A stretch of DNA of 64,000 nucleotides from Ylistrum balloti. Its lineage: Eukaryota. Shown here one piece after another: positions 5,291 to 45,029 of this stretch (its first letter is position 1; every line of letters begins with the position of its first letter). Position numbers and translations under genes: made by a program. A model generated the notes under the pieces. It worked only from the letters and a program-made list of their open reading frames with translations. It searched no databases and was not told where the DNA came from. The stretch spans positions 1,736,001-1,800,000 of the forward strand of contig NW_026782299.1 in NCBI RefSeq assembly GCF_031769215.1, in the 5' to 3' direction.

Positions 5291-6799
5291 ATGGCGTTTA
5301 TTCCAGGGACACTGGTTTGTTGTTTGTCTGTATCACCGATTGTTATGCTCGGATGTGTAATAGTATTTTCGTTGGTTTGGGCATCTAGGAACCGGAAATC
5401 GGCCTCCACGGCACCTGGTCCGTTTCCTTGGCCTCTTATCGGAAATTTGGCAAGTCTTGGTAAAAAGCCTCATGAATATCTAACACAACTTCGAGCGAAG
5501 TATGGAGATGTGTTTCAAATCACAATGGGAAGTACTCCGACTATAGTATTGAATGGTCTTAAAACGATTCGGTCGGCCATGATTAAACAAGCCGAAGACT
5601 TTGCGGGTCGACCTGACTTTTATTCCTTCAAATTTATAGCCAACGGTAACAGTATGGGATTTGGAGATTTCGGACCTCGATGGAAAATGCATCGCCGAAT
5701 TGCCCAAAACTCTCTGGCCCTTTTCACCAATAAACGGAACAACCCAATAGAAATGGCCATAGCGTCGGAGGCAGACGTACTAACCAGCAATCTCATAGCC
5801 TCCGATGGCGCGCCGTTCAATCCCCACAACGAGATCTACCTGTCAGTTGGTAACATTATCTGTGCTCTGTGTTTCGGTAAACGTTACCAGCGGGACGATG
5901 AGGATTTCACTCATTTAATAAAAATGAATGATGAATTTATGGCATTCGCAGGTGCTGGCAACCCCGTCGACATCATGCCGTGGATGAGACATTTCACTAA
6001 AGGTTCGTTCAAAAAGTTTATTGGTATCTTGGACACCATGAACAAATTTAGCTTGAAGAAACGACAGGAACATTTAGACACGTATGACGCGTCTCAAATG
6101 CGGGATATAACCGACGCCCTTATCAAAGCAACCCACGATATCCCAGAGGAAGAAAAGGAGGCCGTCGGACTTACGAACGAGCACATCCTAACAACGGTTC
6201 AAGAACTGATTGGTGCAGGATTCGACACCATCGCCAGTAGTCTACAGTGGTCAGTGTTATTCATGGCCACGCATCCGGATGTTCAGGAAGCTGCGCACGC
6301 AGAAATCCGAGAGAAAGTCGGTCTCCGGCAAATTTCGTTTGACGATATAGAAAATCTGCCATACATTGAGGCATGTCTTTTCGAGACTATGCGTCACTCA
6401 TGCATCTTTCCCTTCGCATTGCCACACAGCACAACCCGGGATACTGTCCTTGACGGACATTTCATCAGAGCAAATACTCTGGTATTCGTCAATCTGTGGT
6501 CTGTCAATCGTGACCCGGAAGTGTTTAATAACCCCAATAAATTTGACCCTTCAAGATTTTTAGATTCTCAAGGAAATGTTGACAAGACCATGACTGACAT
6601 GTTCCTTCCGTTCGGCGCAGGAAGACGAAAATGTCCAGGAGAACAACTTGCAAGGATGGAGCTGTTTATGTTTTTCGCATCAATGATTCAAAAATGTTTA
6701 TTCAAAACGATCCCCGGAAAAAAGCCCGTTATTGACAGCAAATACGGACTAACGCTTAAACCGCTGGACTTCCAGGTGGCCGTATCTGTTAGACAATAG
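5291..6799 (+). CDS. CYP1: Cytochrome P450, CYP1-family-like (clan 2), uninterrupted 502-aa CDS
   Basis: N-terminal hydrophobic anchor, PGPFPWPLIGN hinge, FAGRPD, C-helix WKMHRR, I-helix AGFDT (typical of CYP1), K-helix ETMR, FDPSRF, heme motif FLPFGAGRRKCPGEQLA. Family assignment is from motifs; subfamily cannot be resolved. Confidence 0.93.
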   Translation: MAFIPGTLVCCLSVSPIVMLGCVIVFSLVWASRNRKSASTAPGPFPWPLIGNLASLGKKPHEYLTQLRAKYGDVFQITMGSTPTIVLNGLKTIRSAMIKQAEDFAGRPDFYSFKFIANGNSMGFGDFGPRWKMHRRIAQNSLALFTNKRNNPIEMAIASEADVLTSNLIASDGAPFNPHNEIYLSVGNIICALCFGKRYQRDDEDFTHLIKMNDEFMAFAGAGNPVDIMPWMRHFTKGSFKKFIGILDTMNKFSLKKRQEHLDTYDASQMRDITDALIKATHDIPEEEKEAVGLTNEHILTTVQELIGAGFDTIASSLQWSVLFMATHPDVQEAAHAEIREKVGLRQISFDDIENLPYIEACLFETMRHSCIFPFALPHSTTRDTVLDGHFIRANTLVFVNLWSVNRDPEVFNNPNKFDPSRFLDSQGNVDKTMTDMFLPFGAGRRKCPGEQLARMELFMFFASMIQKCLFKTIPGKKPVIDSKYGLTLKPLDFQVAVSVRQ

Positions 6800-9968: not shown

Positions 9969-12900
9969 AACCCATGGGCCATAACGGTCACCATAGATCT
10001 TCAGGCCATTTGACAGTTTTAGAATCTGTCCACAAGTCTCAGCTTTTGGGTGGCAGAATAGAACTGATATACGCATACTTACAAAGTGTTCTATTCTTTC
10101 TAAGTTGAAGGGCTTAAGTTTCAAACAGAACTGATAACACTGTGTGATGTCGTAGTTTAGCTTACTGACCCCTGTGACTTTGAATAAAGGCCAAAGTCAT
10201 CCATTTGAACAAACGTGAAAGACCTTCATCCCAGCATGCTACTGGCCTAATATCAGCATCCTGTGCCTTTTGGTTATTAAGAAGTCAATTGTTTACGACA
10301 GACTACAATGAAGCAAGGAAAAAAAAACTGCAAAATAAAATTCTCAAAACACCTGATGTGTCAAATTACTGGCTTTGATTAGTTACAATATGTTTCATCA
10401 AAATTAATCAAGGACTGATGAGCTTTTGTTGGCCATTAGTGACCTCGTTACCATAATAGCCAAATTTCTGTTGATAAAAAACCCTACATGTAAATCCTAC
10501 TAGTCCCTAACATCGTGTTATATAGTACACAACAAACACAAAGACAGGGCTACATAAATATCTTTATTGTGTAATATTACCACTGTGTATTACATTCAAT
10601 TAGCTTATTCACATGGTGTAACAAGTGTCATTTGAGAAGACAATCTCCTACATGATCAGTCGGTGAAAAAACAATTTTCTAAAGTGCTTTACAAATAAAT
10701 CCTCCAACCACTTTCACTAAAACATCAAACTTTTGGAAGTTTCAATATGTCACTAATTAAATGGATTACAAAAGGTAACTTATGAATCATAAAAACAGTG
10801 TGATTTGGCTTTATATTGCATCTACATAAAATGAAATGATATACAATGGCCTGTGCCCAGTGAAGCCTCCACAACCCACCGAGGTATCATCTTTCATCAT
10901 TAGAGACACAATGAAGTTACAAATTAGTGTACCTTGTACAATATAGTATGTCGTAAGTCATTAAGATAGTGAATTAATATTACTCATTAATCATGAAATG
11001 GAATAGGTTCATAGTTGAACTATTAATATGTCCGACTCAAATTGATAATGTATTAACTATGTCTGTTATTGCATTCTCATTATCACAGTGCAATCTTTTT
11101 TTTTGTTTTAGTTTTTTTTTCAAACATGCATAGATTTGAATACCGTGGAATATGAAGTATAGCAATGTTGGATCATTTTTAAGGATGATATCTTAGTATA
11201 AACCTATTTTGTGTTCAAGTTAATCTAAGCGATTGAACCAGCATAGTTTGTTTATGAAATAAGGACAGACCTACCTATCTATTTTGCTTTCTAACAGCCC
11301 TGACAGAGACAATGCAAGTCTTTAAAATGAGCAGGTCCGTCATGACTTAGAAGGTATACAGTAGGCTCACACCAGTACATGGACAGGAATTCCACAATAC
11401 AGGGGAGATAACTCCACAAAAAAAATAACAAAGGCACACAAAAATTGTAACAGATCTACACTTGCTCAGGGAAAACACCTGCATGTAGTTAACCATGTAC
11501 AAAAAGTCAGAAAAGCTTTTTTTATAACAATAATCTATAATAACATCATTTAACTCTTTGGTTGACAATTTATAGCAAATATAAGGGATCATTACACTAA
11601 TATTTCTATAATACCTGAACATTGAAACTTTCACCAATTTTATTTCTAAAATGAAAGTTAAACATGAAGTATATGTCCCAACTTCTCTTTTGTGCTTTTG
11701 GTTGTCATTAACATAAACATCTTGCATTATATTGCAAATGACACAAAAACACAGTTCTTAGGGTAAGATTTAAATTATTTCCTCAAAAGAAAAGATCTTT
11801 GTCAAATATAATAACCTGCATTAATCTGGAACACTCTCAATAATCAAACCTTATCTTTCTATCACAAAAACAACATTTTGGCAATTTTTTACACTCTTTT
11901 GATGTCAAATATCTCCATTTAACAGTCAATTCCTTGAATTGGAATGATGGTCATGAATAAGTCAGTTAGAGTACCAGACTCATGGATATGACATAGTATC
12001 AAACTTTCCTTTCATAACAAAGTGCTCAAATATATTGTATTGCAAGATTGACTTAGAAAGAATTATAAAGAATTTACAAATAACACTGATGCTTCAACAT
12101 CACAATTGTCAAAGAGCAAATTTGAATGGACTCAATATCTGCAGTAATTTGGTCTTAAAGAAAGAAGGAAAATCTCATGATCATAGTTACATATTTACCA
12201 ACAATCTTAATTGTTTCTATTACACTTTAAAAGTACATTTTTCTCGAAACCAAAAACAACAGACAAGATTTAGATATCATGCCAACCATAAAAATATAGC
12301 TAAACCTTTGTTCAACTTCGTTACTGAAAACTACTACTTGTAGTTTATAATGAAATAAAATCAAATTTTCTAACAAGCGAAAATTTTAAATTGTGTTTTC
12401 AGACAAAAAGTTTCACAGGAAGCAACTGATAAAATGACATAGGAAAAGATAAATCTGACCTATCAGCAGTAAATTATTACAGTTGATACAGACAATTTCC
12501 ATTTTTTAGATTGATAAAAATTTCAGATCTGACTAATCTACATCACTTTTGAAAGGTAATGATTTCAGGAAAATCTGATGTATCATAGATGTAAATATGA
12601 AATTCTTTTATATATTAAATGAATTTTAATATTCATAATTTGCTTTGAAATCATTCCAAAGAAAAAACATAATGAAGTCAAGCATTTGTTAACAAAACTT
12701 ACAGGTATATAAATCAAGCAATTGTAAAGAAAATTTACAGGTATTACTTGTGAAATGATGCAGTGCATATGGAAATATGGTGATCAGAAATACCACTGAA
12801 ACTCCTTTGGCAGGGGTGGAGCAATAATTTTAAGAAGAAATTGCCATCCTCCACTGGCTTTGCATGGTCAACATGACACATTGTATTCAGTGAACTTCAG

Positions 12901-15900
12901 AAATTTCATTTACAATAGTCTAGAGTGTCATTGATGATTGAAATTCCTTAATTGAAGTTATAAAGCTGTAATTGCCATCCTGACACCAAAATTAATTATC
13001 TTTCAGCTCTGAACCAAGCCAATATTGATTTTTTTGTAAAAACTGGAAAGAGCTAATATCAGGAGGATGACTGTGTCTTTCCTCCTCAAACAACACAAAA
13101 TGTCCTGTGTAAATACAGTTTAAAGAAAAATTAATTAGCTCAAATATTTTACATACAAGTCAATCCTAGTCCACAATAATTACACTGCTCAGATATCTAA
13201 ATTCTTTAATCCCAGATCTAATGTAACAAAATATAATGCACAAATATCAATAACACACTCAAACATCAATAACTGCACACATACACGCCCACACGTAATC
13301 GTGTACATACAAACACATGCAATAATGTACAGTAATAATTTATTGGCTATACCATTATACAACAATGAATATAAATTACTTCCTAGTACAGTCCAGCATC
13401 AACGACCCAATGGTGAGAAGTATCAGGATGTTCTGCAACATGATTCAATCATATACCTTAACATATACCTGGTACTTGACTATGGATTGTGAAAACTATG
13501 CTGAAAACATACTTAATTTGGTCCAACAAAAACTGAAATTTTGGACAAATTAACACCACAATGAATTCATGTATTTGCAATTATTTCTAAATTGACAACA
13601 TACAGGAAGTGCAATCTCTGTAGTGTAAAATGTGCTGAAATCAGATAACCATTAAAACAGGTGTTTACAGTGTAATGGACATGACAGGAAAATTCCTGAA
13701 AGTGGCTATGTTTTTGTCTGTGGTATAGTAAATTAAAGCATGGTCACTTCACACCCTGAATGGGCTTTATCACAGAAAATATTCAAAATCACTGTACAGA
13801 TTCTAGTATTTATCTGTAAATAGGCTCATGACTGGTTATAAGGTCATCCATATCTATTTGAATTAAACAAAAACACCAAAAGATGCTATTTAACTGTCCT
13901 ATAGTAAACACCCCCCCCCCCCTTCTCTCTCTCGCCTTGAGAAAAGATAATGTTTATACCCCATGAGCTTTAATTGCAGTATAAAATTTGGTTACCTTTT
14001 ACATTTATCATGTTTATATTTATTACCTACTAAGGTCTAAATATTGATATATCTACCAAAAATTGTGGCTATGTATTTAGCTTAAATCCCCTTACTGTCA
14101 AATATTCCCTATAACCATACATGTGAATTTATTTGACCTTTAATATTTACCATTCTCAAGCCCTTACATATCTATAAACATTATCTACCATTACCAACAC
14201 TGGGTGTGGACACTAGAACACTCTACAATAAGTAGGGGCATGCTAAGCTTATTAGGCTATAAATACTGTGGTAATTACATCTGACAAATAAATAACTTCA
14301 CAAATCAATGTTATCATCTGATCTGGGTTAGGCTGACATCCACAAAACTAACCTGTGATTTTCAAGACATGTGATGCACGGAAATTATCTGACCAAATAC
14401 AAGTGTCTTAAAGTTATAATTTAAAGTTCAACTTTATTTCATTTATCCTTTTTACTGGCTTGGATGGAAGTTCATGGTGGAGAAAGCCTGAAAACACTTA
14501 GAACTATGTGGTTTGGAATTTGACCCAATAATCTTACTAGTCAAATTGAGGTGGCCAAATTTTGATGAAAAGCAAGTGTGTTATCCAACACACCATATTA
14601 AATCTTAAGCCAGGTAAAAGCTTCTAATTTAGCTATGAAGAAAACAAAATCATACATAAGATAAAATACAGGAAAATGATCAATTTTCAAGGAGGATTTA
14701 TTGTTGCTTTTGTCGGTACTCTCAATCAATGAATTCATATGTCCTTAAAATTTTAAAAGTAGCTTTGTTAAGCAATATTTATCCACGAACATAAGGGTAC
14801 ATAAGATAGTGATTTATTGAAAAGAGAAACCATCACAAAAACTGAACCACACAAAAATATATGATTCTAAACTAATTCTTCTGTATTATTCCACACCTCA
14901 GATCATCAGTAGTTTACTTTATCAAAGCCAAGACAAGTCATTCTCACATCCTTAATATCAGTAGAATTAATACCTTATACTTTGTTCACTTGCGAAAAAA
15001 AACAATTTCTACAACAAAAGCACCATGTGTATGTTATCAAATCTGCGTGATCTACAATTAACAACTGTTATAATAAGGCCCCAAATTACACGACATAAAT
15101 ACATTCTGGTCTGATGTCCTGTATTGCACCGGTCAGTGTCTCATTTTCTCCTGTGTGTTTTTGTGAACTTTTGGCTTTAACTGCACAAGAAAAAATGCAC
15201 TACATAATTCTTGCATAAAATACTGTGAACCATGCCTTACAAATTACATACATATCAGAGACATAGTAAACCTTGCCTTACAAACTATGTACATATCAGA
15301 CATTGAAAAACTTGCCTCACACACTAATCATTAGACATGCTAATGACCTTAATGGTTGTGATGCTTAAATTTATGCAGATCCTTTCTTTTTGTCAATAAA
15401 CAAACAAGCTCTCTATATCCGGTACAGTGATCAGTTTACATACTTGCATACACAAGTTTCATGCCAAGTAGACATTGCAGATGGGGAGAACGTCTGAGAC
15501 AGCTGTGTTCAGCCAGCAGGTCACACTAAAAATATTTCTGTTCCACATTATTGTAAATCACTTATTCCTGTGATATTTTTTGACTTATAATTCCTGCAAA
15601 GAAAAAAATATCACTTCCAAGAAATCTCCTGAGTTTCCAAGACATAAGTTGAGGTGATATCAAAACTTGTTTCATGAATTTTATTTCCTTTTACGTAAGA
15701 CACAGCTAAGGAACAATCCAAAAGTCATGTTCTAATGACACTGATTATTGTTTTGAAAACTTTCACAGTACAGGATCCTTACACAACCTTCCTCCTGAAA
15801 TATTGTAACAACCTTTTTTGTGAATTTGCAAGATCACAAAAGAAATTGAATTTCTGTCATGATATCAGTCAAGTATCAAGACTAGCATTCAGTTGTAAAA

Positions 15901-17559: not shown

Positions 17560-18055
17560 CTGAAATACACAAAATAAGGTCATTATTGTTTTTAAAAAGA
17601 TTCAGCTCAATATCAAAGATATAAATATAGGCTCTTATCCGCACAATCCGCTCAAAGTTTCTAAATCTACTGCCAATTACATAAATATCATCATTTATCA
17701 GTGTCTAATATCCATTTTAGATTATATTTTTTCAGTTGTGAAAATATAACATGGTTAAAATTTCAGTTTCAACTGCCAGGCTGGGTGAAATTTTTACATT
17801 GTAACCCTTATGATTGTCAAAATTCATATACAAGTTTTATTTAAATAAATACACTGTCACAATCACAAGCCTAATGCTCTTTGCTCTAGGTTTGTTGACA
17901 TTTTGATTGATTTACTAAATCTGTAGTTACCAGTATTACTTTTACAAAATATGACCTGGTGGGAATTTTGTTTGCTTTACATTTTTCAAAATTACAAACT
18001 ATGTTGAATTCTCCCTCTTGGTTGCTTTGTTCAAAAAGTGTAGTGAATAGCATAC

Positions 18056-21000
18056 CTTGAAGTTATTGCCAATCAGGTGCTGCATCTCATGCATAACAAG
18101 CTGTCCCGAGGCAGTAAATTCCCGATCACAGTACTGGCATATGTAACTGTCGACTTTACAAGGCTCCTCCAGTTTAACGTTGACCTCAGTGACCTCTGGT
18201 GAGTCAGTCAGCATAGCAGACTCTGTCTGACCATCTCCATTAGAAGATGTCCCATTCTCAACAGGACAGCTGGCTGCTTTTGATGTTTGGTTTAACTCAG
18301 GGGTTTCAACTTCTGAGGCAGTGTTGATTGCTTTTGAATCATCATCAACAGATGGGAGAGATACCTCAGTCTGGGAAACTTCAGAGCCATTGTCAGTAGA
18401 AGGCTTTTCTGTTGCAACATTCTCAACTTCTGTGGGTGACTTGACTGCCACTGGTTCTGTTGTTGACAAATGACAGTCCGAACTACTAGATGGGATGTCA
18501 GTCAGACTACACTCTGCAGTACTAGGGATCTGCTCTCCTGATTCATTCTTGGAGTGATCATTTTCCATATTTTTCCTACAGGCCTCTTTTTTTATCTCCC
18601 CTTGAAGTAACTGTGCCACATACAGAGCTTCTGTGATATCAGGTTCCTTTGACTGTTTCATTCGATCCATCTGTCCATTTTGAGCTAGCCAGTTGGAGAG
18701 CTCGGGTAGAGGAGAGAAGTGGACTTTGATGTGTTGAGTCAGTAGGTGTTGTTTGGATGCCGTGTAATCACAGTAGGGACATGCCAGGTCACTGCGAATC
18801 ATGTGGAATTTAAGGTGAGACAGCAAGTGGTCACGTCGAACATTAGCATAGGGACAGCGATCACAGCGATAGAGCTTTTTAGGTTCAGATTCGGAATCAG
18901 CTGAATTTTCAAACAGCTCCAGATGATCATGAGTGACATTGACAGTGAATGATTCTTTCGTGTCTAGAGGTGGCAGAGCACTGGCCAAAGCAACGTCTGC
19001 AGGGACCTCAGGTAGCTGTAGAAGATTTGATAAAGACTGGGCAACCATAAGATTCTGGTTGGGAGTTCTATGTAGCTTCTCATGCTGGGCTAACAGGTTC
19101 TGTGAAGGCACACTGTAGTCACAGTATCTACATCCACATCGCTGCTTACTGCCATGAAGTTCCACATGGTGCTCATAATGCGATCGTTTTGCACTGGCAT
19201 AGGGACATTTTTCACAGCTATATTTCTTGAACCTGGCTATCTCATAAAGTGTGTCCACTTTGCTCTCATATGGGATGTCAACGATATCTGACTTGTCATC
19301 TACATCCTCTTCTGCACCACCTCCTTCAATGGCTTCAAGGTCAGAGATTGTAGTGTCAGAGATATCCATCATGTATCCAGGCTGGTGCACCTTGAGATGA
19401 TGGGAAATTAAGCCCTTGGAACCTACATAATAGTCACAATGGGGACATTTCAACAGAGGGTTCCTTGATATCCGGACATTGTGCATCATTTCATGCAATT
19501 TGAGGTTCCTCAGACGAACAGTCATGTAGGGACATTTCTTACACTTCTGAAGTTTCTTGTAGACACCATTTCTGAACACATAACCAGGCTTGTTACCAAC
19601 TGAGCAGGCAATCTTCATGGGAGACATCAGGGGTTTCTGGGATATACTCGGCATTATCTTAGAGGCGATGACTTTCTGTTTGTAGTTGGCAAGCTGTACC
19701 ATATCATAGATACTACTGGACTCTGAAAAGTCCGATTTGCAGGGTGAGGATTGTGCTGAGCTGTTAGTGCTCTTTGCTGCAGGCGATTGGTGATTGATCT
19801 CATGTACTTTCATGTGCTGCTTAAGCAAACGTCGGTGTGTTACCCAGTAGTCACACAAATGACACTTGAACTCTGCATTCTCCTTTGGCTTGTGGAACTG
19901 CTTGTGGTAGAGGTAATCATTCTTACTATTACTGGTGTAAGGACACTTCTCACAGCGGTGACGCTTCGGAGTGGTAGGAATACTAGGCGCAACAGTCTTA
20001 ACGGGTGTTGTGGGAGTTGGGAAAACCACCTCTTTGGTAGTACTTGTAGTAGTTTCTTTATAAACATTTCCCTCATGAAGTTTGATATGCTGACGGAGAA
20101 GTCTCTGAGCCACAACAAAGTATGGACAATAAGGACACTTGACCTGTTGGGCACCTGGCTGGGCCTTGTGACAGCTCATGTGGAACTGCAGTAGGTTGGA
20201 CTTGTCAGTACGGTAGGGACATACATCACACTTGAATCGCCGCTCTGTGACACGAACCTCACCTTTGGATCTTTTTTCATCCTTGAAATACTTTCGTACT
20301 CTAAGCACTTTTCCTTTGCTTCCTCCACCTTTGTGTTTCTCGCGCAGATGCCTTGTGACACAAGATCTCCAGCTGGACTGAAATCCACACAATTTGCACT
20401 TGAACATATCATAATGATCATCTGGCTCTGCGTCCTTCCAGTCAAAGTCCTCCCTTTCTCTGTTGTCAATTGGCTCCATCATCTGCCCATCCTTGCCTTG
20501 CTTGACACATTTGATAGCAGACCTACAGAGGGACAAATTTTCACTATGATGCCTGACCCGAATATGTCTACAGGCAGAGCTTCGATAGTTGGTGGCATAG
20601 TTACAGATAGAACATTTGTAGGCCTTCACATTGTGCATACTAAGATGGTTGATCACAACAGTTCTGTCAAGATTTTTGAATGAACATTTTCCACACTTCC
20701 ATATATTTGATAGACCACTGTTGTTTTTCGACTGAGAATTTTCATCAGCCTCTCTTTTTTTCCTTGGATTGTAGTTATATTCCATCAATGACACTTTTGC
20801 CTCCTCTGTATCCATGACAACCAGTCTGGAGCGCCCGCCATGTTTACGTTTCGTGTGGCGTACAATGTCACTTCGCCAGTTAGATCTGTAAGGACATCCA
20901 GAGCATTTGAATTGCTTGTAGACTCCCTTGCTAGGTACATTTTGTGGACTTGTTGTCTTGGTTGCCTTCTCAGCTTCCTGCATTACTGCCTTTTTGTATG

Positions 21001-24000
21001 CACTGGAGACATGAGTGGTCTGGCTGAACTGTGCCATATACTCATCATGGGTAGCACGAGCATCTGCCTCTGTCAGTGCGATCATATGGGCTGTCGTACT
21101 GCCAGGATGTTTCATTCTAATGTGTTTATTTAGGTCCCATTTCCAGTTGGACCGGCGTCCACAGTCAGAGCACTGGAATGGCTTACAGTAGCCAAATACT
21201 TTCGGATCAGCTGAAGCAATAGGCAGTCCTCCAGGATAATTACTATAAGGCCGTCTGCCAGGTGAAGGCCCCTTTGCTGGAGATGAGACAGGAGTTGTTG
21301 GACTGTTTGGTACCGTGGTATTAAATCTGTCATGTGGTGCATTTGGATTTTCTTGGTAAAACACCCTTACCTCCAATCCTGGATGGATATAGTTATAGTG
21401 CTTCTTAATATCTGCCTTTGTAGCACTACGTTTTCCACAATCCCCACACATAAATGGTTTAATAAGACTAGCTGCCGAGACCCGGTTCTGTGCAAACTCA
21501 GGGGTCTGTTTCTCTGGAGTGGCTTCTACATCATTCATTACGCCCTTGCTGGGGGTCTTTTCAATCTCGCGCATGCTTGAGGTGGATGAGGATGATGACA
21601 ACTTCCTTTTGTTGTTGCGTGGTATGGGAGGTTCTTCTGGAAGCATCTTAGTCCCACTATCGTCAGTGTACCAAATTTTGATAGGCTGGTTAGGATGCCT
21701 ATAATGGTAGTGTTTTCTAATGTCGGCTTTAATATTTCCAGTTTTTCCACATTCCACACATTTGTAAGGCTTGTCTTTATCTCCTGGTTCTGATACATAA
21801 AATGGTGGAAGATTGCTTGTGGAAGTATCAGAAGCCACTACTGGAGTGGACATCTTAGGCTCCGTAGGTAAGCTCATACGTGGGATTTTTATCTGGATTT
21901 CTTCATCTACATCTTCTTCGACCAAGCAGATGATGTCTACATTCAAACCACTGTGTGAGTTACGAATGTGTCTACTCACAGCGACACGAGTACTAGAGTT
22001 GTAATCACAGGCACTACAGACAAAACTGTTGCCAGGTTTGCCTGCCTCTCCATCCTCCTCATTGGTAGCAGGAACATTGAGGTGGTGATCTCGACGCACC
22101 ACTGGCATGGTGTCCAAATACGTCTGGATGGTGGCTTCAGCCTCCTGCCGGCTGAGTTTTACCACGTCAAGGACAGTGTCTGGATGATCCTTTCTAATGT
22201 GTTTCCTGATGTCCCACTTCCAGTTGGCACGTCGTCCACATACAGGACACATGTATTGCTTCAGGTTTGTATGGGTTGATACATGTGCTTTTAGCTTGGA
22301 TTTCGCATTGGTAATAAAGTCACAGTAATTGCAGCGATATAGACCTGACGGCGATGCTTTCAATGGTGAGGACTCTGAATCACTGTCATCATCATCATCT
22401 TCATCAAATACCTGGTCTGTGTCACGACTAGAATTGCTTTCAATCTCCATTTTCTCACCATCCAATGGTTCAGTAACATCCTTGTCCTTTCCTGGTAGCT
22501 TGTCTGTCAGGATGGTGATAACATCATCCAATACTACATCATCCACCATGACAGCCGGGTGATGTTTGTACATGTGTCTGCGAATGTCGCCCTTCCAGTG
22601 TGTCTGGTATACACAATGTTTGCAACAGAAGGGTTTGTCACCCTTATGGAGTTTGGAGTGTCTATCAACCTCTGACTTCCATGGAGATGTGAACGAACAA
22701 GATGGACATTTAAATATAGCAGGTGAGGACTTGCGGTTAGGAATAGTAGGAACCTTAACATGTTTGACTGAGCCAGGCTCTTTTTTGTGATCCCGTCTGA
22801 GGTGGACATTAAGGTCACCAACATACTTGTATTGTTTATTACAGTGTGGACACTTATATCGTTTCTCTACAGTGTGAACGACCATGTGACGTTGCAGATC
22901 ACTGGGCCACTTTGCGATATAGGTACAGTAGCAGCATTTGAGACTGTCCTTGTCCGTAATATCATCTACATCTTTGGAGGACACAGAAAGGTCCAATGGT
23001 CCATCCCCAGCCTCCTCTTGCTGCTGCTCAACCTCTGCTTCTGCTAGATTTGGCGCTGAAGTATTTGCATATAGGTCAATATCACGTAGATACTGTTTCA
23101 CAGTCATCTTATGCTTTAATTTCATGTGGCGATTCAGGTCAGAAGAACGTTTGTACTTGAGCCCACAAAGGGGACAGAAGAAGCTTCCCTCTACTGTCTG
23201 AAGGCTAGGAATTCCCTCACTTAAAATTTCACTGTCAGATATATTCAAAGATGTACCTTTCTGTTTGCCAAGAACTGGTGAGGCTACTGTAAGCTTCACA
23301 CCATCGGGAGGAGCTTCATCAATAGTACATTCAACAGAAGTGTCAGCATCAGGGAAAATCAGGGACACATTTTCAGCACTGTTAGTGTGATTGTTGGCCA
23401 TATGACGCTTGACAGTACCCTCATGGTCACATGAGTAGGTACAGAATTTACACTTGATGCTGTAATTGTTGGTGTGGTTGAGTCTGTGACGGTCTAAATT
23501 TGGTTTGAAGTCAGAAGTATAGTCGCACTCCATACACTTGTATGCAGTTTTACCGCTGTGTTTGGACTTGTGGGAATAATAGTCTTTCTTCTTAACCGTA
23601 GTAAAGCTGCAGATGTTACATTTGTAGGTCCTTGCATTGATGTGTATACACTGTACATGTTTAGACACACGATACTTGTCAGCATTGTTGAACAGACAGT
23701 ATTTGCACTTGAAGAGTTTCTTGCCTCCTGATGTCAGCTCCACTATGTGGTTTTCATAGCCAACAGGTAAGATGTCTTTACCGCGGGCTGCTTGTCGACC
23801 GGCAGTAGTTGTCAGGGCAATTTTCACTTTCAGTGGAGCAATGTTTTTAACAGGGCTTTCTGCTGGTGTTTTTGGAGATTTGCTCTTGTAATTGGCAGCT
23901 GCAATTTCAGTTTGGTATTCAATTTTGACATCATCAATATCAATATTGTAGCGGTGAACTAACTTAAGGTGGCGCTGTACTTTGTGGCGGTGCTTGCAGG

Positions 24001-24478
24001 CATACTCACAGAAGTTACAGGAGAAGATACTGAGGTTTTTATGATGGGTGTTAATAAGGTGATACAGGAAAGTCTTTGACTTGTTGGTCCAGTAAGTGCA
24101 CTCTGTACAACGGTATGTTCTACAATATACATTTCCTTTTCGATAGGTTTCAGTTGGTGGTGAACTGATAGAAGCTGGTTCTTCTTCAGTCTGATTATTG
24201 CAGTCACTCGATTCCAAAGGCAATTCAACGCCCTCATCTGCTGGAGAACTGGGCTCTTCTAGTTCAAGTTTTGGTAATCTGGATGTTGAGGCTGATGCAA
24301 ACAATGAGGCACCTGAAAATTTTAATTTCACCTTGTCTTGTTTAGGGGCATGGGCCTCTGTGTACCTCTCACGTTTACATCGGATCTTGTGGCGCTTGAA
24401 GATATAGGCATTCTTGGTAGAAAACATACAGCACAGGTCACATTTTAACAGGGTCAGCATGGAGTTTTTCTTCCCCAT
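18056..24478 (-). CDS. Large multi-C2H2 zinc-finger protein (about 33 fingers, REST/ZNF462/hunchback-like finger style), main exon
   Basis: Acceptor TTTTGTATTTTTCAG|GCTCCAACATG at 24486, so ATG is 24478 (the first 36 codons of the track ORF are intronic). Donor AAG|GTATGC after ...GNNFK at 18056. Repeated C-x2-C-x12-H-x3/4-H motifs; no KRAB, BTB or SCAN domain seen. Confidence 0.92.
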
Positions 24479-24599
24479 GTTGGAGCCTGAAAAATACAAA
24501 AGAAATAAAGAGGGAATAAAAACAGATGTTCGACTGAACAATTTTACAGCAATAGAAAAATGAACATTCCAAATTTTCGAAAACATTTTAAAAATAACA

Positions 24600-36900: not shown

Positions 36901-36924
36901 GTGTAGCATTGCTATATTGACACT

Positions 36925-38207
36925 AGGTAATGAACCAGTCTTTTATAGACACCAGGTGGTGAACTATTTCTATAAAGACACTAGGCGGTGAACTATTCTA
37001 TATAGACACCAAGTGGTGAACTATTTATTTTTACACACCAGATGGTGAACTATTCTATATAGACACCAGGTGGTGAACTATTTCTATAAAGACACTAGGT
37101 GGTGAACTATTTCTATATAGACACTAGGTGGTGAACTATTTCTATATAGACACCAGGTGGTGAACTATTTATTTTTACACACCAGATGGTGAATTATTTC
37201 TATATAGACACCAGATGGTGAACTATTTCTATATAGACACCAGGTGGTGAGCTATTTCTATATAGACACAGGTGGTGAACTATTTCTATATAGACACTAG
37301 TTGGTGAACTATTTATTTTTACACACCAGATGGTGAACTATTTTTATATAGACACCAGGTGGTGAGCTATTTCTATATAGACACTAGGTGGTGAACTATT
37401 TCTATATAGACACCAGATGGTGAACTATTTTTATATAGACACCAGGTGGTGAGCTATTTCTATATAGACACTAGGTGGTGAACTATTTCTATATAGACAC
37501 CAGGTGGTGAACTATTTATTTTTACACACCAGATGGTGAAGTATTTCTATATAGACACCAGGTGGTGAGCTATTTCTATATAGACACAGGTGGTGAACTA
37601 TTTTTATATAGACACTAGTTGGTGAACTATTTATTTTTACACACCAGATGGTGAACTATTTTTATATAGACACCAGGTGGTGAGCTATTTCTATATAGAC
37701 ACTAGGTGGTGAACTATTTATTTTTACACACCAGATGGTGAACTATTTTTATATAGACATTAGGTGTTAAACTATTTCTATATAGACACCAGGTGGTGAA
37801 CTATTTCTATATAGACACCAGGTGGTAAACTATTTCTATATAGACATTAGGTGTTAAACTATTTCTATATAGACACCAGGTGGTGAACTATTTCTATATA
37901 GACACCAGGTGGTAAACTATTTCTATATAGACACCAGGTGGTAAACTATTTCTATATAGATACCAGGTGGTGATTTATTTCTATATAGACACCTAGTGGT
38001 GAACTATTTCTATATAGACACCAAGTGGTGAACTATTTCTATATAGATACCAGGTGGTGAATTATTTCTATATAGATACCAGGTGGTGAACTATTTCTAT
38101 ATAGACACCAAGTGGTGAATTATTCCTATATAGACACCAAGTGGTGAACTATTCCTATATAGACACCAAGTGGTGAACTATTTCTATATAGACACCAGGT
38201 GGTGAAC
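36925..38207. repeat. About 29-bp tandem repeat, about 44 copies
   Basis: Unit AGACACCAGGTGGTGAACTATTTCTATAT, with recurring variant TATTTATTTTTACACACCAGATGGTG. Confidence 0.95.
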
Positions 38208-38580: not shown

Positions 38581-38791
38581 ATGTACCGTTATGTCCTTGC
38601 ACTGTCCTTCGTGTACCTCGTAGGTCCGACCTCCGCCAAGGACCGTCGTATTTTGATGACCGATCCCGCTTATGTGGCCCATGAACTAGACCGTCTAGAG
38701 TCCGAACTACAACAGCTCCAAGCTAAAGTCACCACCCAACAACACACCATAGACAGCCAACAGTCGACTATCACCACACTTACCAGTCAAG
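38581..38791 (+). CDS. Short-chain collagen C4-like (spongin SSCC NC1-domain) protein, exon 1: signal peptide and coiled coil
   Basis: MYRYVLALSFVYLVGPTSA signal-like segment, heptad-like ELDRLESELQQLQAKVTTQQHTI; donor CAAG|GTATGT, phase 1. Confidence 0.85.
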
Positions 38792-39476
38792 GTATGTATC
38801 AGTTGTTTCCGTCAAAAATAACCAATAAACCTTAAGTGTTTATGTCAGATGGAATGAAAAGCGGGTGTCAGTTGTTAATTATATAACAGATCTCTTACAA
38901 AAACTCTTCAAAGCAGTATACTTTACAAATGTATATGAAAACATCGAACTGCTTTCAGTTGACCACCATAGGCCAACAAGGTAAGGCCAAGTTCAATGCA
39001 GCACTATGATGAATTTGATTTTATGCAGTTGGAATCTGAAATGCCGCGATACGCCAATTACGGGTAGTTCAATGGGCATATAGTTTATCATTTTCAAGGG
39101 AAGACAACTTTAGTTAGTTTCTTTCCATAGTCCTGCGTTAATGACTGTTAGTAATGCAAAAAATTAACTTTGGTTCTTCACTTGTATGTCTGAAGTACAA
39201 TCTTTAAGATAGTCGGTGGTAGACACTGCTGGTGGACTTTAAGTCCTCGAGGTTTGCTGTAACCTGCTTGCCACATTTAAATGCATTCGAATAGTGGCAC
39301 TGTTCAGAAAATATACGCGTAATTGATGCTTTTCTAAAATTATCTACTGTATGACAATTACAAAATTTATCTTATTATGGGGCTGCTGTACCTCCCAGTC
39401 TAGAGTTTGACTTTTTCGCTGATCATTTTGGATTTTCCTTAGTTGCTTCCATGGCTTCAAAATTTAGGCCTTTAGC

Positions 39477-39915
39477 ATCACTGACGAGTCCTAGAAGGCC
39501 GAACCAGCTGTAGGATATAAAATCACTGACAAGTCCTAGAAGGACGAAACAGCTGTATGATATAGAATCACTGACGAGTCCTAGAAGGCCGAACCAGCTG
39601 TAGGATATAAAATCACTGACAAGTCCTAGAAGGCCGAACCAGCTGTAGGATATAAAATCACTGACAAGTCCTAGAAGGACGAAACAGCTGTATGATATAG
39701 AATCACTGACGAGTCCTAGAAGACCGAACCAGCTGTATGATATAGAATTACTGACGAGTCCTAGAAGGACGAAACAGCTGTATGATATAGAATCACTGAC
39801 GAGTCCTAGAAGGACGAAACAGCTGTATGATATAGAATCACTGACGAGTCCTAGAAGGACGAAACAGCTGTATGATATAGAATCACTGACGAGTCCTAGA
39901 AGGACGAAACAGCTA
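39477..39915 (+). ncRNA. Tandem array of ten 45-bp minimal hammerhead ribozyme units (Penelope-type)
   Basis: Unit ATCA-CTGACGA-GTCC-TAGAA-GGAC-GAAA-CAGCTG-TA-TGAT-ATAGA contains the CUGANGA core, stem II, GAAA, palindromic stem III, GUA cleavage triplet and ATCA/TGAT stem I. Units 7-10 have intact cores. Activity is untested. Confidence 0.85.
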
Positions 39916-41881
39916 TGTTATGCAGTTTAATTGGTTATTTGGCTCTACTGTATCTCACTCTAAATTATGAAATGGTGCTATTCAATTTTGTGTCTTTTGT
40001 ACAATCTTTGGTAAGGTTACACGGTAACAATGTTATAGAGGTCATTATCTATTTAACCAACCCCCCCCCCCCCCCCCCCCACCCCCCACCCCCCAAATAA
40101 GGTATAAAGAGTGAAGTTCTCTCTAGCTGAGAGGAGTTACATGCATCCCTCTCAAGGAAATTAAATCGTTCTCGAGTTTCCCGGGGTTGTAACGATGCTT
40201 GTGAATAACGCTAAATGATATTCTCGAGAGCCACATTGCCTGTCAATGTCAAAGGTCATTGTTTATTTCAATGTATCGATAAGATAAGAACACAGGACGT
40301 CCGGTTCACATGGTTGACCTTTAACCGATGGATCTAAAGAGAGGTTCTCTCTAGCCGAATGGCGGTTAGTAATTTACCAGGGTTACACCTGTTGGTAAAA
40401 AAAAAAAACAACCCAAAAGCAAACAAACAAAATCGTAAGTTTGAAGATAGAAATCCATTTCGGCACTAGGTAAAGTAGCGTTTCAATGCAAAATGTTATC
40501 TAATTTTCCCTGCAGGTTTCCATCTCAATGTGTCCAGCGCTCCACATGACCTAATCTGTTGATGAAGTAGATGCAATAAAACCATATATTGAATTAAACG
40601 TTGAAGTCTCTCTTTAAAAAAAGGCATGAAAATACCAACATGTCATCATAATCGTAATCAAAGCTGTGAACAAAAGAAAGACTTAAACGGAGACTCCTGA
40701 AGAAGGGAATAAGACCAGGTGTTCCGACAGAGTAAGCGTCCTGACTACAGTAAAACTTCCCCATAACTAAAAATTACTGAACAGCCTCTATCTACACACT
40801 TATCTCTTATTGTAACAACATTGATAAGGTATGGAACTATATTGGATGGAATCCTGCTATATCAATGTCTGTTCATGTGTAAATGATTAGCAAGAAAAAG
40901 GAAAGGTATTTCAAATGGGAATTATGATAAAGTTAAGGAACTTTTTTACGCTTTTAAATGTTGGCCTCGACATGGTAAGAGAACTGCTGTTTATCCATCT
41001 CACGCCTCTTTTGGCACAACAGGTCCTAGGTCACACACTTTACTCAAACGTCTTTCAAAGATATATATTTATATCCTGTCATGAATTACTCACATGGGTG
41101 ACCTAAATAATGACAAAACCATTATAATCCATCTGAAAAGTGAGAATAGCTCACCTCTGAATCTCAAACTTGCTGGTTCTAGGTTTCATATTGCGAAGAA
41201 CAAAAAATCGTTTGAAATCTTGATTAAGAAATTAGTTATTAAGTAAAACGTATGGCCAAAGCTGTGAACTTAGATTATACAGAAAGGAAAACATCATCAG
41301 GCCGACCAATATCGGAAATTAACAGATCCGGATACCCTTCCTTTAGCGGAATATGGAGATAGCGAACAGGGTTTTTGATTATCTAGAATATCACAGCTGT
41401 TTTAATAATTTAATAATCATTCACATTACCATTACTGCTATTATGTCGTTTACACGTCTTCGGCAGATGTCAGTTCGACCTCTACTATTTAAAATTTAGA
41501 TTGATATTAAGCATAAAATAAAGTTTAGAATGACTTTAATACGTCCATTAAACAACACAATAATAAACATACTTCCATTTGTCCTAGAATATCATGAGAA
41601 ACATTTTCTATGTCTAGCATTCAAACGTGCCTAGCTACGTTTGTCCCGATAGCGATTTCCGATGAGCTCTTGAGAGAGAAAATTATTACACAGACGAGAC
41701 GACTCCTATTAGCAATGTCAAATGGGTCATGCAAAACGGTTTTACAAGTCTCGACCGACACAGTCTGCAAGATAAATGTTGATCAATTTGAAAGCAATAA
41801 AAATAAGAGTTGCGATCAATTCAAAATATTCTTGAAGGATCAATATGGTACTTACAGCATTTCGTTTTTTTTTGTTTACAG

Positions 41882-41959
41882 GGGGTCGAGGCGTGGTTTA
41901 CACCAGATGGGGCAGAAAAGACTGTCCCGAGGGCAGTGGGAACCAGCTGGTCTACTCTG
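41882..41959 (+). CDS. Short-chain collagen C4-like protein, exon 2 (GRGVVYTRWGRKDCPEGSGNQLVYS)
   Basis: Acceptor TTTGTTTACAG|GG, donor TCTG|GTACGG, phase 1-1; YxRWGRxxCP is the family's NC1 start motif. Confidence 0.88.
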
Positions 41960-43544: not shown

Positions 43545-44553
43545 TGCAAATAACTGGCGTTATTTCTATGCATAGCATACACAGTATGAGAATATATGGT
43601 ATCTAGCAAATTTCAATCTGTTTCAAATCAATATGCCGTACACAAATTTTTCAACAATTTTCAAATCACCAGTTTCCAAAATATTTTTTTTTAAGATTTT
43701 GAATTTGATTTGAATTGCCTCCAGGAATAATGGACAATCTATGTTAATATTGTTCATACTGAAACAGAAACCACTTTATGGACGATATGGAAGATTATGC
43801 CACTCCATCACTATTAGTTCTGGTTATGCTGGCGACGAAAATCGTTTTAAATAAACGTTGCAAATACAGTTCATGTGTGACCCTTAAAAATAACTATTCT
43901 AGTAATTTCCCGATATGTTACCTCTCGTTCGGCCCGCATGAAAGTTCCGGCCGCTTCGCTTAGTACCAATATCCTGTGTGGCTACCATACGGTGATTTAT
44001 TTACGTAAACATAATTCATAATTAAAATTCAAAGTGGATAATATAACTCCTCCTTAAACCAGTATTCTTTCAATGTAAGGCAAACATTGTTTGTCTACAA
44101 TAATTTTGATCCTATCTTATTTTCGTGTTAACGAAGGTGACCACGCCCACTAACATTCCGGTCAAATATAATGCTCATAAGCCTTAATGCTAACTCATTT
44201 GGTTTTTTTTTTTTTTTTTAAATTTGAAGACCTTGAAAGCGTGTTAAAAGTCACTTCCTATCGCAAAGCGTCATACAGGGAACCTACCAGCCAATTCCGT
44301 GATTCCAGGCCAGGTCTTGTTGTAATTGTTCAATGTTTTTGACCAGAACCCCAGGAAGGTTCCAGTCAGTCAGCTAAACATTGACAAACATTTATGGTTT
44401 TTGACAGTAATCCAATCTAAGCACTGAAAAGATATTCTAAATGGAAACTGGTGAAGACCGGACTTTTAAGATTCCTTCGTTGCCATTAGTAGACAAGTTT
44501 TGGATACCGACAATGAAAAACAAACAGAAAATCATTATATATTTCTTTATCAG

Positions 44554-45029
44554 GTTATGCCGGTGGATCCTGGTACAGCGCTGCTGGTCCGGCTGCCAAT
44601 CCACTGTGCATGCCCCCTGACCCTACGTGGGGGCCACACAAAAATACATCCCTCACCTATCCATCCTACTTGTATGGCGCCGAGTATGACGACACAACCG
44701 TGTTCGGTATGGCTGATTTTAGTGAAGACGTACCGTGCGCCGTGTGTAGAAGTTCAGCCCACTCCATCATCAACATGATACCTGGTCGTACCTCGTGCTA
44801 CCCAGGTTGGACTGTGGCATATGAAGGTCTACTGACATCCGGGTACCCAAAAAGTAATTCTGGTAACGAATTCATTTGTATGGACGGTCATCCTCAGGCT
44901 GTTCTTGGTGGAGGTAATACGAACGATAACGGGCTTCTGTTCTATGCTGTTCTGTCCCAATGTGGATCTCTTCCTTGTCCTCCATATGAGAATAACAAAG
45001 TATTGTCATGTGTTGTCTGTATGATGTAA
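44554..45029 (+). CDS. Short-chain collagen C4-like protein, exon 3 (NC1-like domain to stop)
   Basis: Acceptor TTTCTTTATCAG|GT; GYAGGSWY..ANPLCMPPDP..LYGAEY..DVPCAVC..MIPGRTSCYPGWTVAYEGLL..EFICMD..CGSLPCPPYENNKVLSCVVCMM*; AATAAA at 45030-45035 directly after the stop. Total CDS 765 nt, 254 aa. Confidence 0.92.

What the first reader, a model, noticed from the sequence alone, without database searches (positions are those of the whole stretch)
39477..39915. Intronic satellite made almost entirely of hammerhead ribozymes: ten 45-bp units that complete each other's fold
Seen: the unit is ATCA|CTGACGA|GTCC-TAGAA-GGAC|GAAA|CAGCTG|TA|TGAT-ATAGA. This is a full hammerhead: CUGANGA core, G10.1-C11.1 stem II, GAAA, GUA cleavage triplet. 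Alone, stem III (CAG/CTG, no loop) cannot fold. Across a junction, CAGCTG of unit n pairs with CAGCTG of unit n+1 (6 bp) and TGAT-ATAGA-ATCA closes stem I, giving a complete 51-nt type III hammerhead (e.g. 39775-39825, predicted cut after A39782). Up to four intact sites are predicted (after 39737, 39782, 39827, 39872). Established: minimal Penelope-associated hammerheads with palindromic stem III cleave as dimers, and hammerhead satellites/retrozymes with longer monomers occur in animals. Inference: this array lies on the sense strand of intron 1 of the SSCC gene, so the pre-mRNA could cut itself and release 45-nt RNAs with 5'-OH and 2',3'-cyclic phosphate ends. These could circularise or alter splicing and expression of the host gene.
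Basis: partly seen in the sequence, partly recalled or inferred. Interest (0 to 1): 0.92.

Follow-up and report, generated by a model that had tools for sequence, protein, structure and literature searches.

The report
Transposon-borne hammerhead ribozyme minisatellite
A real 45-bp tandem repeat in a scallop gene intron has a hammerhead self-cleaving RNA motif as every unit, but it is one partly decayed copy of a mobile-element family scattered through scallop genomes, not a device of the host gene.

Summary
There is a 45-bp x 9.8 array at 39473-39914 (+). Each unit is a hammerhead motif, and units 7-10 have intact cores. The four junction-spanning type III sites (after 39737, 39782, 39827, 39872) check out. 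The array lies on the sense strand of intron 1 of an annotated Ylistrum balloti short-chain collagen C4-like gene.

The interpretation needs correcting. The array is the amplified ribozyme module of a dispersed repeat family (tail, head, hammerhead). I found six copies in 260 kb of scallop DNA, in both orientations. One is a 49-bp x 15.7 array in a different gene of Pecten maximus with homologous flanks. Orthologous introns in Pecten and Argopecten lack the array.

The ribozyme consensus is nearly identical between the two genera, and helices I and II covary, so the family preserves a true hammerhead. Within arrays most units are dead (6 of 10 here), and dead units were copied in blocks.

Units completing each other's fold is the known double-hammerhead principle. 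In multimer transcripts the competent fold is a 0.2-0.7% conformer.

The scan had already noted many 45-bp hammerhead arrays elsewhere in this genome (unchecked notes).

Verdict: a new variant of a known kind, of moderate interest. Cleavage and any effect on the host gene are untested.

The parts
39155..39218 (+). Partial 'tail' block at the 5' end of the element. It is a terminal direct repeat of 39966-40008, which makes the copy slightly longer than one unit.
   Evidence: Alignments A3 and A6. The same block is continuous with the head in L008:21295-21425 (-).
39219..39476 (+). 'Head' of the dispersed repeat family. It ends in TTTAGGCCTTTAGC, which supplies the outer part of helix I (GCAUCA) for the first hammerhead.
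   Evidence: Homologous to Pecten L004:20307-20507, Ylistrum L009 (-) and L008 (-). No tRNA-like part. The RNA is not unusually structured (z +0.87).
39477..39746 (+). Hammerhead units 1-6, all with inactivating changes (G8->A in 2, 4, 5; A15.1->C plus a helix II mismatch in 1, 3, 4, 6). Units 1-2 recur as units 4-5, a 135-bp block duplication.
39747..39881 (+). Hammerhead units 7-9: complete motifs with core, helix II, GAAA, palindromic helix III and a GUA site.
   Evidence: 68.8-72.5 bits with model R1.
39882..39914 (+). Unit 10: intact catalytic core, but its own GUA site and helix I 3' strand have been lost where it merges into the tail.
39730..39915 (+). Stretch holding the four predicted junction-spanning (type III register) hammerheads. 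Predicted cuts after 39737, 39782, 39827 and 39872 would release three 45-nt RNAs.
   Evidence: The cuts are predicted only; no cleavage data exist.
39915..40008 (+). 'Tail' of the family, starting right after the position of the hammerhead cleavage site (motifs ..GCAGTTTAATT.., ..TTTGGCTCTACTGTATC.., ..GTGTCTTTTGTACAATCTTT).
   Evidence: Shared with L004:21277-21330, L008 (three places) and L009.
38581..38791 (+). Host gene exon 1 (ATG at 38581; donor GT at 38792), short-chain collagen C4-like.
   Evidence: P0001 residues 1-70.
41882..41959 (+). Host gene exon 2 (acceptor AG at 41880-41881).
44554..45029 (+). Host gene exon 3 (acceptor AG at 44552-44553; stop codon included).

Best explanation
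The array is the internally amplified ribozyme module of a non-coding dispersed repeat family of scallops. The basic unit of about 350-400 bp is tail, head and one canonical type I hammerhead: helix I GCAUCA/UGAUGC, helix II GUCC/GGAC, and a short palindromic helix III. This layout is closest to the non-LTR retrozymes and Penelope-like-element-derived repeats of animals. One such element (about 39155-40008) sits in intron 1 of a Ylistrum balloti collagen C4-like gene. Shown here: the element's anatomy; its multiple copies in two genera; near-identity of the ribozyme consensus between genera; compensatory changes in helices I and II; decay and block duplication of dead units within arrays; and absence from the orthologous introns. 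Inferred: the family spreads through an RNA copy in which the hammerhead is needed, which is why the consensus stays a ribozyme. The 45-bp unit arose by tandem duplication of the hammerhead plus a few flanking bases and then grew by unequal exchange at the DNA level. After insertion each copy decays neutrally. In this copy, transcripts of the host gene would carry three or four potentially competent hammerheads that fold across unit junctions, as in the double-hammerhead model, but cleavage is probably slow and of little consequence for the gene.
For: Array and motif. Host gene and strand. Second array (49 bp x 15.7) in intron 1 of a paralogue in Pecten maximus, with flanks 77-80% identical although that paralogue's exon 3 is only 67% identical. 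Further family copies: L009 (head plus one decayed unit, antisense in an intron), L008 about 12300-13140 (58-bp hammerhead-derived units with the same tail, antisense), L011 (69-bp units), L008 about 21250-21400 (tail-to-head junction, intergenic). Orthologous introns lack it. Copy of more than unit length. Consensus ribozyme conserved between genera while the loop 1/spacer differs by an indel. Covariation: 85.6% of cells paired against 42% or less when partners are slid, 3 helix I pairs and 1 helix II pair changed on both sides. One Pecten unit reaches Rfam's type I gathering score (34.6 against 34). Same helix II and helix III in a classical 565-bp tandem retrozyme-like repeat from lake metagenomes. 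Block duplications that include dead units. Literature: tandem type I hammerheads with a palindromic helix III act as dimers (PMC4209133, PMC6765202); mussel retrozymes are 350-390 bp (PMC7229834); retrozymes derive from the terminal repeats of Penelope-like elements (bioRxiv 10.64898/2026.07.22.740005). Lead only: 258 unchecked scan notes mention hammerheads in this genome, many describing 45-bp arrays.
Against: No long tandem array of the full ~400-bp monomer was seen in my sample, and no target-site duplication or empty site could be defined. The spacer RNA of this copy is not unusually self-paired (z +0.87), unlike described retrozyme circles. No reverse transcriptase or Penelope-like ORF lies in the window, and no link to an autonomous partner was tested. 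Homology to the metagenome retrozyme outside the ribozyme is weak. Five of six copies lie inside collagen C4-like gene bodies (about 23% of the sampled DNA). That is odd, although the sample is centred on those genes. There are no RNA data at all.
Confidence: 0.72

Rival explanations
1. Fragment of the terminal repeat (pLTR) of an autonomous Penelope-like element, whose minimal hammerheads are known to occur in tandem.
For: Reviews state that these elements carry minimal type I hammerheads in tandem that may cleave as dimers (PMC7761336; PMC7229834). Copies of more than unit length and short tails are typical of Penelope-like insertions (PMC8557442).
Against: No RT or GIY-YIG ORF lies near any of the six copies or anywhere in the window. 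Helix II is 4 bp and helix III is of the canonical short-stem/palindromic-loop type, not the 7-8-bp helix II and absent helix III described for minimal hammerheads of Penelope-like elements (PMC4209133). This rival overlaps with the best explanation if retrozymes are derivatives of those terminal repeats.
Confidence: 0.12
2. Non-autonomous DNA transposon (Helentron- or MITE-type) carrying an internal tandem repeat, an architecture common in bivalves. The repeat would happen to derive from a captured hammerhead.
For: The layout is head + internal tandem repeat + tail. Several modules of the family form satellites. Oysters carry satellite-like repeats inside Helentron-derived elements (PMC7492417, listed).
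Against: No terminal inverted repeats or terminal hairpin at the element ends. The terminal direct redundancy and the continuous tail-to-head junction point to a tandem or circular template. Strong conservation of the ribozyme between genera, with compensatory changes, suggests the RNA fold matters for propagation.
Confidence: 0.08
3. One reading: a host-gene device. The intronic array cuts the pre-mRNA, releases 45-nt RNAs, and tunes splicing or expression of the collagen C4-like gene.
For: Sense orientation in intron 1. Three or four motifs are intact on paper. A paralogue in Pecten also has a sense array in intron 1.
Against: Orthologues in Pecten and Argopecten lack it. Other family copies are antisense or intergenic. 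Six of ten units are dead, and dead units were duplicated. The competent fold is 0.2-0.7% of the ensemble in multimers. Comparable hammerheads are slow in vitro (PMC4209133).
Confidence: 0.05
4. An ordinary minisatellite that resembles a hammerhead by chance.
For: All Rfam matches in the window are below gathering score.
Against: Zero matches in shuffles. The same motif is conserved in a second genus with different spacer and period. Compensatory changes occur in helices I and II. One Pecten unit is above Rfam's type I threshold. The core and helices are identical to those of a classical tandem retrozyme-like repeat.
Confidence: 0.01

Closest known systems
Animal non-LTR retrozymes (type I hammerhead tandem repeats of coral, mussel and axolotl; Cervera & De la Pena 2020, PMC7229834)
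   Same: Canonical type I hammerhead (6-bp helix I in the monomer context, 4-bp helix II, short palindromic helix III). Non-coding and low in GC. Family monomer of about 350-400 bp, like the mussel repeats. Copies of more than unit length. Dispersed in many copies in a bivalve genome.
   Different: Here the ribozyme module alone is amplified into arrays with a 45-49-bp period, so the repeat unit is essentially nothing but the ribozyme. Described monomers are 150-450 bp with one hammerhead each. No long arrays of the full monomer were seen, the spacer is not highly self-paired in this copy, and circular RNAs are untested.
Minimal hammerheads of Penelope-like elements that cleave as dimers (Cervera & De la Pena 2014, PMC4209133; Lunse et al. 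2017 as cited in PMC6765202)
   Same: A weak or palindromic helix III that is completed by a second copy. Tandem copies. Low expected activity. Association with retroelement-like repeats.
   Different: Helix II is 4 bp (not 7-8), and helix III keeps a C-G pair and an AGCU loop. No Penelope-like ORF is nearby. The units are directly adjacent, so the 'dimer' is intramolecular and equals a type III permutation.
Double-hammerhead of newt satellite 2 and avocado sunblotch viroid (Forster et al. 1988, as cited in PMC4209133 and PMC3088659)
   Same: Two neighbouring hammerheads share one extended helix III. Monomers are inactive and multimers are active.
   Different: In those cases the repeats are about 250-330 nt, with one ribozyme per unit.
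Hammerhead satellites: Dolichopoda pDo500 (PMC2837043) and Schistosoma Sm-alpha
   Same: Satellite or SINE-like repeats that encode a hammerhead conserved across species.
   Different: Their units are hundreds of bp, and the hammerhead is a small part of each unit.

Membership tests
Hammerhead ribozyme (motif) | Conserved core: CUGANGA, GAAA, and an NUH cleavage triplet | tested here: met
   Units 7-9 are complete and unit 10 has the core only. Units 1-6 fail (G8->A or A15.1->C).
Hammerhead ribozyme (motif) | Three helices around the core, including G10.1-C11.1 and A15.1-U16.1, supported by covariation | tested here: met
   The 51-mer folds as a three-way junction. 85.6% of cells are paired, against 42% or less in slid controls. 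Helix I has 3 pairs and helix II 1 pair changed on both sides. Caveat: the sequences are related and the structure was taken from the consensus.
Hammerhead ribozyme (motif) | Score at or above the Rfam gathering threshold (RF00163 / RF00008) | tested here: not met
   Window: 39.4 against 48.5 (type III) and 32 against 34 (type I). One homologous Pecten unit passes type I (34.6 against 34).
Hammerhead ribozyme (motif) | Mg2+-dependent self-cleavage at the predicted site | not testable with these tools
   Only thermodynamics could be computed: the competent fold is 15-53% of the ensemble in isolated 51-mers and 0.2-0.7% or less in multimers.
Hammerhead ribozyme (motif) | Loop 1/loop 2 tertiary contacts that give fast cleavage at physiological Mg2+ | tested here: inconclusive
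   In the array helix I is only 4 bp with a 5-nt loop. No recognisable contact motif was examined. By architecture it looks like a minimal, slow hammerhead.
Non-LTR retrozyme | Canonical type I hammerhead (helix I about 6 bp, helix II 4 bp, short palindromic helix III) | tested here: met
   In the monomer context the head ends in GCATCA and the tail starts with TGATGC. Helices II and III as.
Non-LTR retrozyme | Head-to-tail tandem repeats of a 150-450-bp non-coding monomer | tested here: inconclusive
   Monomer of about 350-400 bp inferred. Seen: a copy of more than unit length, a tail-to-head junction, and hammerhead-spacer-hammerhead in L008. No multimer of the full unit was seen in 260 kb.
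Non-LTR retrozyme | Low GC (<45%) and no ORF | tested here: met
   GC 0.38-0.43. No meaningful ORF.
Non-LTR retrozyme | Unit RNA highly self-paired | tested here: not met
   Head/spacer 39155-39476: z +0.87 against shuffles. This is one possibly decayed copy.
Non-LTR retrozyme | Expressed as linear and circular unit-length RNAs with hammerhead-made ends | not testable with these tools
   No transcript data are available.
Penelope-like element minimal hammerhead | Located in the terminal repeat of an element with an RT + GIY-YIG ORF | tested here: not met
   No such ORF in the window or next to the other copies (gene tables).
Penelope-like element minimal hammerhead | Helix III reduced to conserved nucleotides; helix II 7-8 bp; helix I 4-5 bp (PMC4209133) | tested here: not met
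   Helix III keeps C-G plus an AGCU loop, and helix II is 4 bp. Only the short helix I of the internal units fits.
Minisatellite evolving by unequal exchange | Tandem units with higher-order blocks and propagated variants | tested here: met
   Units 1-2 recur as units 4-5 (135-bp offset). In Pecten a 7-unit (343-bp) block recurs.

The most novel reading that the evidence does not exclude
The 45-nt unit is the smallest natural self-processing retrozyme. [quoted passage not shown] These would be ligated into mini-circles and copied by rolling-circle reverse transcription, presumably by a Penelope-like RT. That would be how arrays of 9 to about 100 units arise and spread, and sense intronic copies such as this one would measurably sever host pre-mRNAs.
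Probability: 0.1. Interest if true: 0.8.

Novelty: new variant of a known kind. Interest (0 to 1): 0.42.

Why it matters
Hammerhead-bearing repeats of animals (retrozymes, terminal repeats of Penelope-like elements, classical satellites) are known with units of 150-450 bp. Here the repeat unit has collapsed to the ribozyme itself: 45 bp in Ylistrum and 49 bp in Pecten, with 58- and 69-bp relatives. It recurs at many loci. I found no such hammerhead-only arrays in the papers I could search.

These arrays are natural intramolecular double hammerheads. They give a simple system for asking whether weak-helix-III hammerheads work in vivo, since the products would be discrete 45/90/135-nt RNAs. They also show how a transposable-element module turns into a minisatellite.

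For the host gene, the evidence points to a passenger insertion, so no gene-regulation story should be built on it without RNA data.

Tried and rejected
- **Rfam at gathering score:** no match in the window. Only sub-threshold hammerhead matches appeared with permissive filters.
- **An ancient, conserved intron-1 element of the collagen C4-like family:** considered because Pecten's paralogue also has a sense array in intron 1. Rejected for four reasons. The true orthologues lack it. The flank identity (77-80%) exceeds that of the paralogous exons (67%). Other copies are antisense or intergenic. The Mizuhopecten gene most similar to the Pecten paralogue has none.
- **SINE with a tRNA-like head:** ARAGORN found nothing.
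- **DNA transposon ends:** no terminal inverted repeats at the element boundaries.
- **Self-paired retrozyme-like spacer:** not seen.
- **Autonomous partner in the window:** no RT or endonuclease ORF; the long ORFs are a P450 and a zinc-finger protein.
- **Homology to the 565-bp metagenome retrozyme beyond the ribozyme:** only weak.
- **Not available:** a circular-monomer folding script timed out. Lunse et al. 2017 and the Terminon paper are not held. There was no record for P0027.
- **Sigma-70/terminator scan:** irrelevant for a eukaryote and uninformative.

Full report

Yes. Tandem Repeats Finder reports one array at 39473-39914 with period 45, 9.8 copies, 93% matches and no indels.

The per-unit table shows:
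- Units 7-10 keep an intact CUGANGA box, a 4-bp helix II and GAAA.
- Units 1, 3, 4 and 6 have A15.1->C plus a helix II mismatch.
- Units 2, 4 and 5 have G8->A.
- Unit 10 has lost its own GUA where it merges into the flank.

The last has one C/A mismatch at the outer end of helix III. The 51-mer 39775-39825 folds as the expected three-way junction (MFE -13.9 kcal/mol, z -3.4).

Rfam finds nothing at gathering score. With permissive filters the only families matched are hammerheads: type III at 39.4 bits against 48.5, and type I at 32 against 34. E is 5e-5 and 5e-4 for the whole window. The core-plus-helix II pattern occurs four times, against none in 100 shuffles.

A15.1-U16.1 and C15.2-G16.2 can close a palindromic AGCU loop, which is the canonical short helix III of metazoan type I hammerheads (PMC4209133).

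**2. Host gene**

An ORF with a signal peptide and coiled coil (exon 1, 38581-38791, donor GT at 38792), a short exon (41882-41959) and a Cys-rich exon (44554-45029) splice in phase. Together they give exactly the 254-aa protein P0001, named 'short-chain collagen C4-like [Ylistrum balloti]' by NCBI. The array therefore lies on the sense strand of intron 1 (38792-41881), 686 bp downstream of exon 1. No transcript data were available.

**3. The decisive comparison**

I fetched the orthologous genes of Pecten maximus (P0002, L004:10001-13702) and Argopecten irradians (P0003, L005:10001-13293). Their intron 1 has no hammerhead and no similar repeat.

The next gene in Pecten is a paralogue (P0005; exons at L004:17528-17758, 21804-21887 and 22478-22960). 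It carries a 49-bp x 15.7 hammerhead array at 20508-21276, also in intron 1 and in sense. The sequences flanking the two arrays are homologous: window 39221-39303 matches L004 20307-20388 at 80%, and window 39460-39954 matches L004 20492-21314 at 77-79%. Yet exon 3 of the two genes is only 67% identical, and the rest of the introns cannot be aligned. That pattern fits a mobile element rather than inherited intron sequence.

**4. More copies**

In 260 kb of scallop DNA fetched around members of this gene family, blast, a regular expression and a covariance model built from the units found these:
- L009, Ylistrum, minus strand: the same head followed by one decayed hammerhead unit, antisense in an intron.
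- L008, about 12300-13140, minus strand: a hammerhead end plus tail, then a head-length spacer (only weakly alignable to the other heads), then 57-58-bp hammerhead-derived units, then a tail, antisense in an intron.
- L011, Pecten: 69-bp units with a damaged core.
- L008, about 21250-21400, minus strand: a continuous tail-to-head junction without a hammerhead, intergenic.

Alignments A3-A6 define the family:
- **Tail:** about 95 bp, starting directly after the cleavage-site position.
- **Head:** about 260-300 bp, ending in TTTAGGCCTTTAGC.
- **Hammerhead:** in this monomer context helix I is a canonical 6 bp (GCAUCA/UGAUGC).

The whole unit is about 350-400 bp, the size of mussel retrozymes (PMC7229834).

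The window's copy starts inside a tail at about 39155 and ends with a full tail at about 40008, so it is slightly more than one unit long. That is expected for copies made from a tandem or circular template.

The short repeat units have different boundaries in different copies:
- 45 bp: hammerhead plus TAGA.
- 49 bp: hammerhead plus GTCCCTAG.
- 58 bp: hammerhead plus tail start plus head end.
- 69 bp in L011.

So hammerhead-centred short tandem units arose repeatedly.

**5. Is the ribozyme maintained?**

At family level, yes. The consensus units of Ylistrum and Pecten are nearly identical from helix I through the core, helix II, GAAA and CAGCTGTA. The loop 1/spacer part differs by an indel, even though the orthologous introns of these genera are unalignable.

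In a gap-free 44-nt type I alignment of 29 units from Ylistrum, Pecten and a lake-metagenome retrozyme-like repeat, the counts are as follows:
- 85.6% of cells are standard pairs, against 11-42% when partners are slid.
- Three helix I pairs and one helix II pair change on both sides.
- No shuffle out of 500 reached the observed covariation score.
- The usual caveats apply: the sequences are related, and the structure was taken from the consensus.

One Pecten unit passes Rfam's curated type I threshold (34.6 against 34).

Within arrays, no. Only 4 of 10 (Ylistrum) and 6 of 16 (Pecten) units keep the core plus helix II. Dead units were copied in blocks: units 1-2 recur as 4-5 here, and a 7-unit block recurs in Pecten. 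This is ordinary minisatellite turnover without selection for catalysis in place.

**6. How it would work as RNA**

The palindrome ACAGCUGU of neighbouring units can form one extended helix III. UGAU-AUAGA-AUCA then closes helix I, and the result is half of the classical double hammerhead. This principle is already in the literature for tandem hammerheads (PMC4209133 Fig. 1A; PMC3088659 Fig. S8 legend; PMC6765202).

Constrained partition-function calculations give the competent fold the following share of the ensemble:
- 15-53% in isolated 51-mers.
- About 0.2-0.7% at the best sites in 96-601-nt multimer transcripts, and as low as about 1e-5 to 1e-6 at the weakest.

The reason is that each unit prefers a hairpin in which core C3-U4-G5 pairs with the CAG of helix III.

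The energy model ignores the tertiary structure of the core and co-transcriptional folding, so activity is not excluded. However, comparable minimal or dimeric hammerheads cleave weakly in vitro (PMC4209133). I therefore rate efficient cutting of the pre-mRNA as unlikely.

**7. What it is not**

- There is no tRNA-like head.
- There are no terminal inverted repeats.
- There is no RT or endonuclease ORF in the window.
- The spacer RNA of this copy is not unusually self-paired (z +0.87).
- The motif does not meet the description of the minimal hammerheads of Penelope-like elements. Those have a long helix II and no helix III.
- A lake-metagenome repeat (L001-L003) is a classical 565-bp tandem unit with a type I hammerhead that has the same helix II and the same GAAACAGCTGTA. 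Similarity outside the ribozyme is weak.

**8. Earlier notes of this scan**

The index lists 258 notes containing 'hammerhead' for this genome. Many describe 45-bp arrays whose whole unit is a hammerhead (9 to about 105 copies; one in a guanylyl-cyclase intron). Others describe 63-bp relatives and solo intergenic hammerheads. They are unchecked leads. They agree with my own sampling and suggest a genome-wide family. So the scan has found this before on other DNA of the same genome.

**9. Literature**

Searches for tandem, minisatellite, bivalve or scallop hammerheads found retrozymes with 150-450-bp units, hammerheads of Penelope-like elements 'in tandem', and classical hammerhead satellites. 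None described arrays whose unit is only the ribozyme. Two key papers (Lunse et al. 2017; Arkhipova et al. 2017) could not be read, so a precedent cannot be excluded. A 2026 preprint reports that vertebrate retrozymes are depleted from introns. That fits the view that intronic copies are tolerated passengers.

**10. Verdict**

- Best explanation (0.72): a retrozyme-like dispersed repeat whose hammerhead module is amplified into a minisatellite. The family as a whole keeps a working ribozyme design, and individual copies decay.
- Novelty: a new variant of a known kind.
- Interest: moderate (0.42).
- Bolder reading (about 0.1): 45-nt self-processing mini-circles that spread by rolling-circle reverse transcription.

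Noticed in passing
window 36908-38207: A 29-bp x 45 minisatellite about 370 bp upstream of the collagen C4-like gene's ATG. Its core (TAGACACCAGGTGGTGAACT) resembles the head motif of the hammerhead element (GGTAGACACTGCTGGTGGACT at about 39217-39240). If so, two different modules of one repeat family formed satellites within 3 kb. The similarity is short and was not significant by blast.
   Followed up: partly
L011:24703-24991 and L008:21277-21314: A Pecten 38-bp x 7.7 satellite clearly matches the element's head motif (92% over 26 nt). Ylistrum L008 has the same motif as 13 bp x 2.9. The family seems generally prone to internal tandem amplification.
   Followed up: partly
L001-L003 (lake metagenome contigs): A classical retrozyme-like tandem repeat of 565 bp, with a type I hammerhead (6-bp helix I GCAAUG/CAUUGC) that shares helix II and helix III with the scallop units. 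The source organism is unknown, possibly a freshwater invertebrate.
   Followed up: partly
All six element copies (window, L004, L008 twice, L009, L011): Five of six copies lie inside gene bodies of the collagen C4-like family, which make up only about 23% of the sampled DNA. This is probably a sampling effect of loci centred on these genes, but it is not explained.
   Followed up: no
L004:18476-19947, L004:14085-14500, L011:23566-24604: Further unrelated minisatellites (59 bp x 25, 35 bp x 11.9, 47 bp x 22) in and around Pecten genes of the same family. These introns are rich in tandem repeats.
   Followed up: no
window 40061-40094: A poly-C run of 34 nt, about 50 bp downstream of the element's end.
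   Followed up: no
window 5291-6799 (+): An intronless 502-aa ORF that is a full-length cytochrome P450 (Pfam E 8e-115).
   Followed up: no
window 17999-24586 (-): A single uninterrupted 2195-aa ORF with many C2H2 zinc fingers.
   Followed up: no
L005:1-5317: Next to the Argopecten orthologue lie a YqaJ/viral alkaline exonuclease-type gene and a DDE_Tnp_4 (Harbinger/PIF-type) transposase gene.
   Followed up: no
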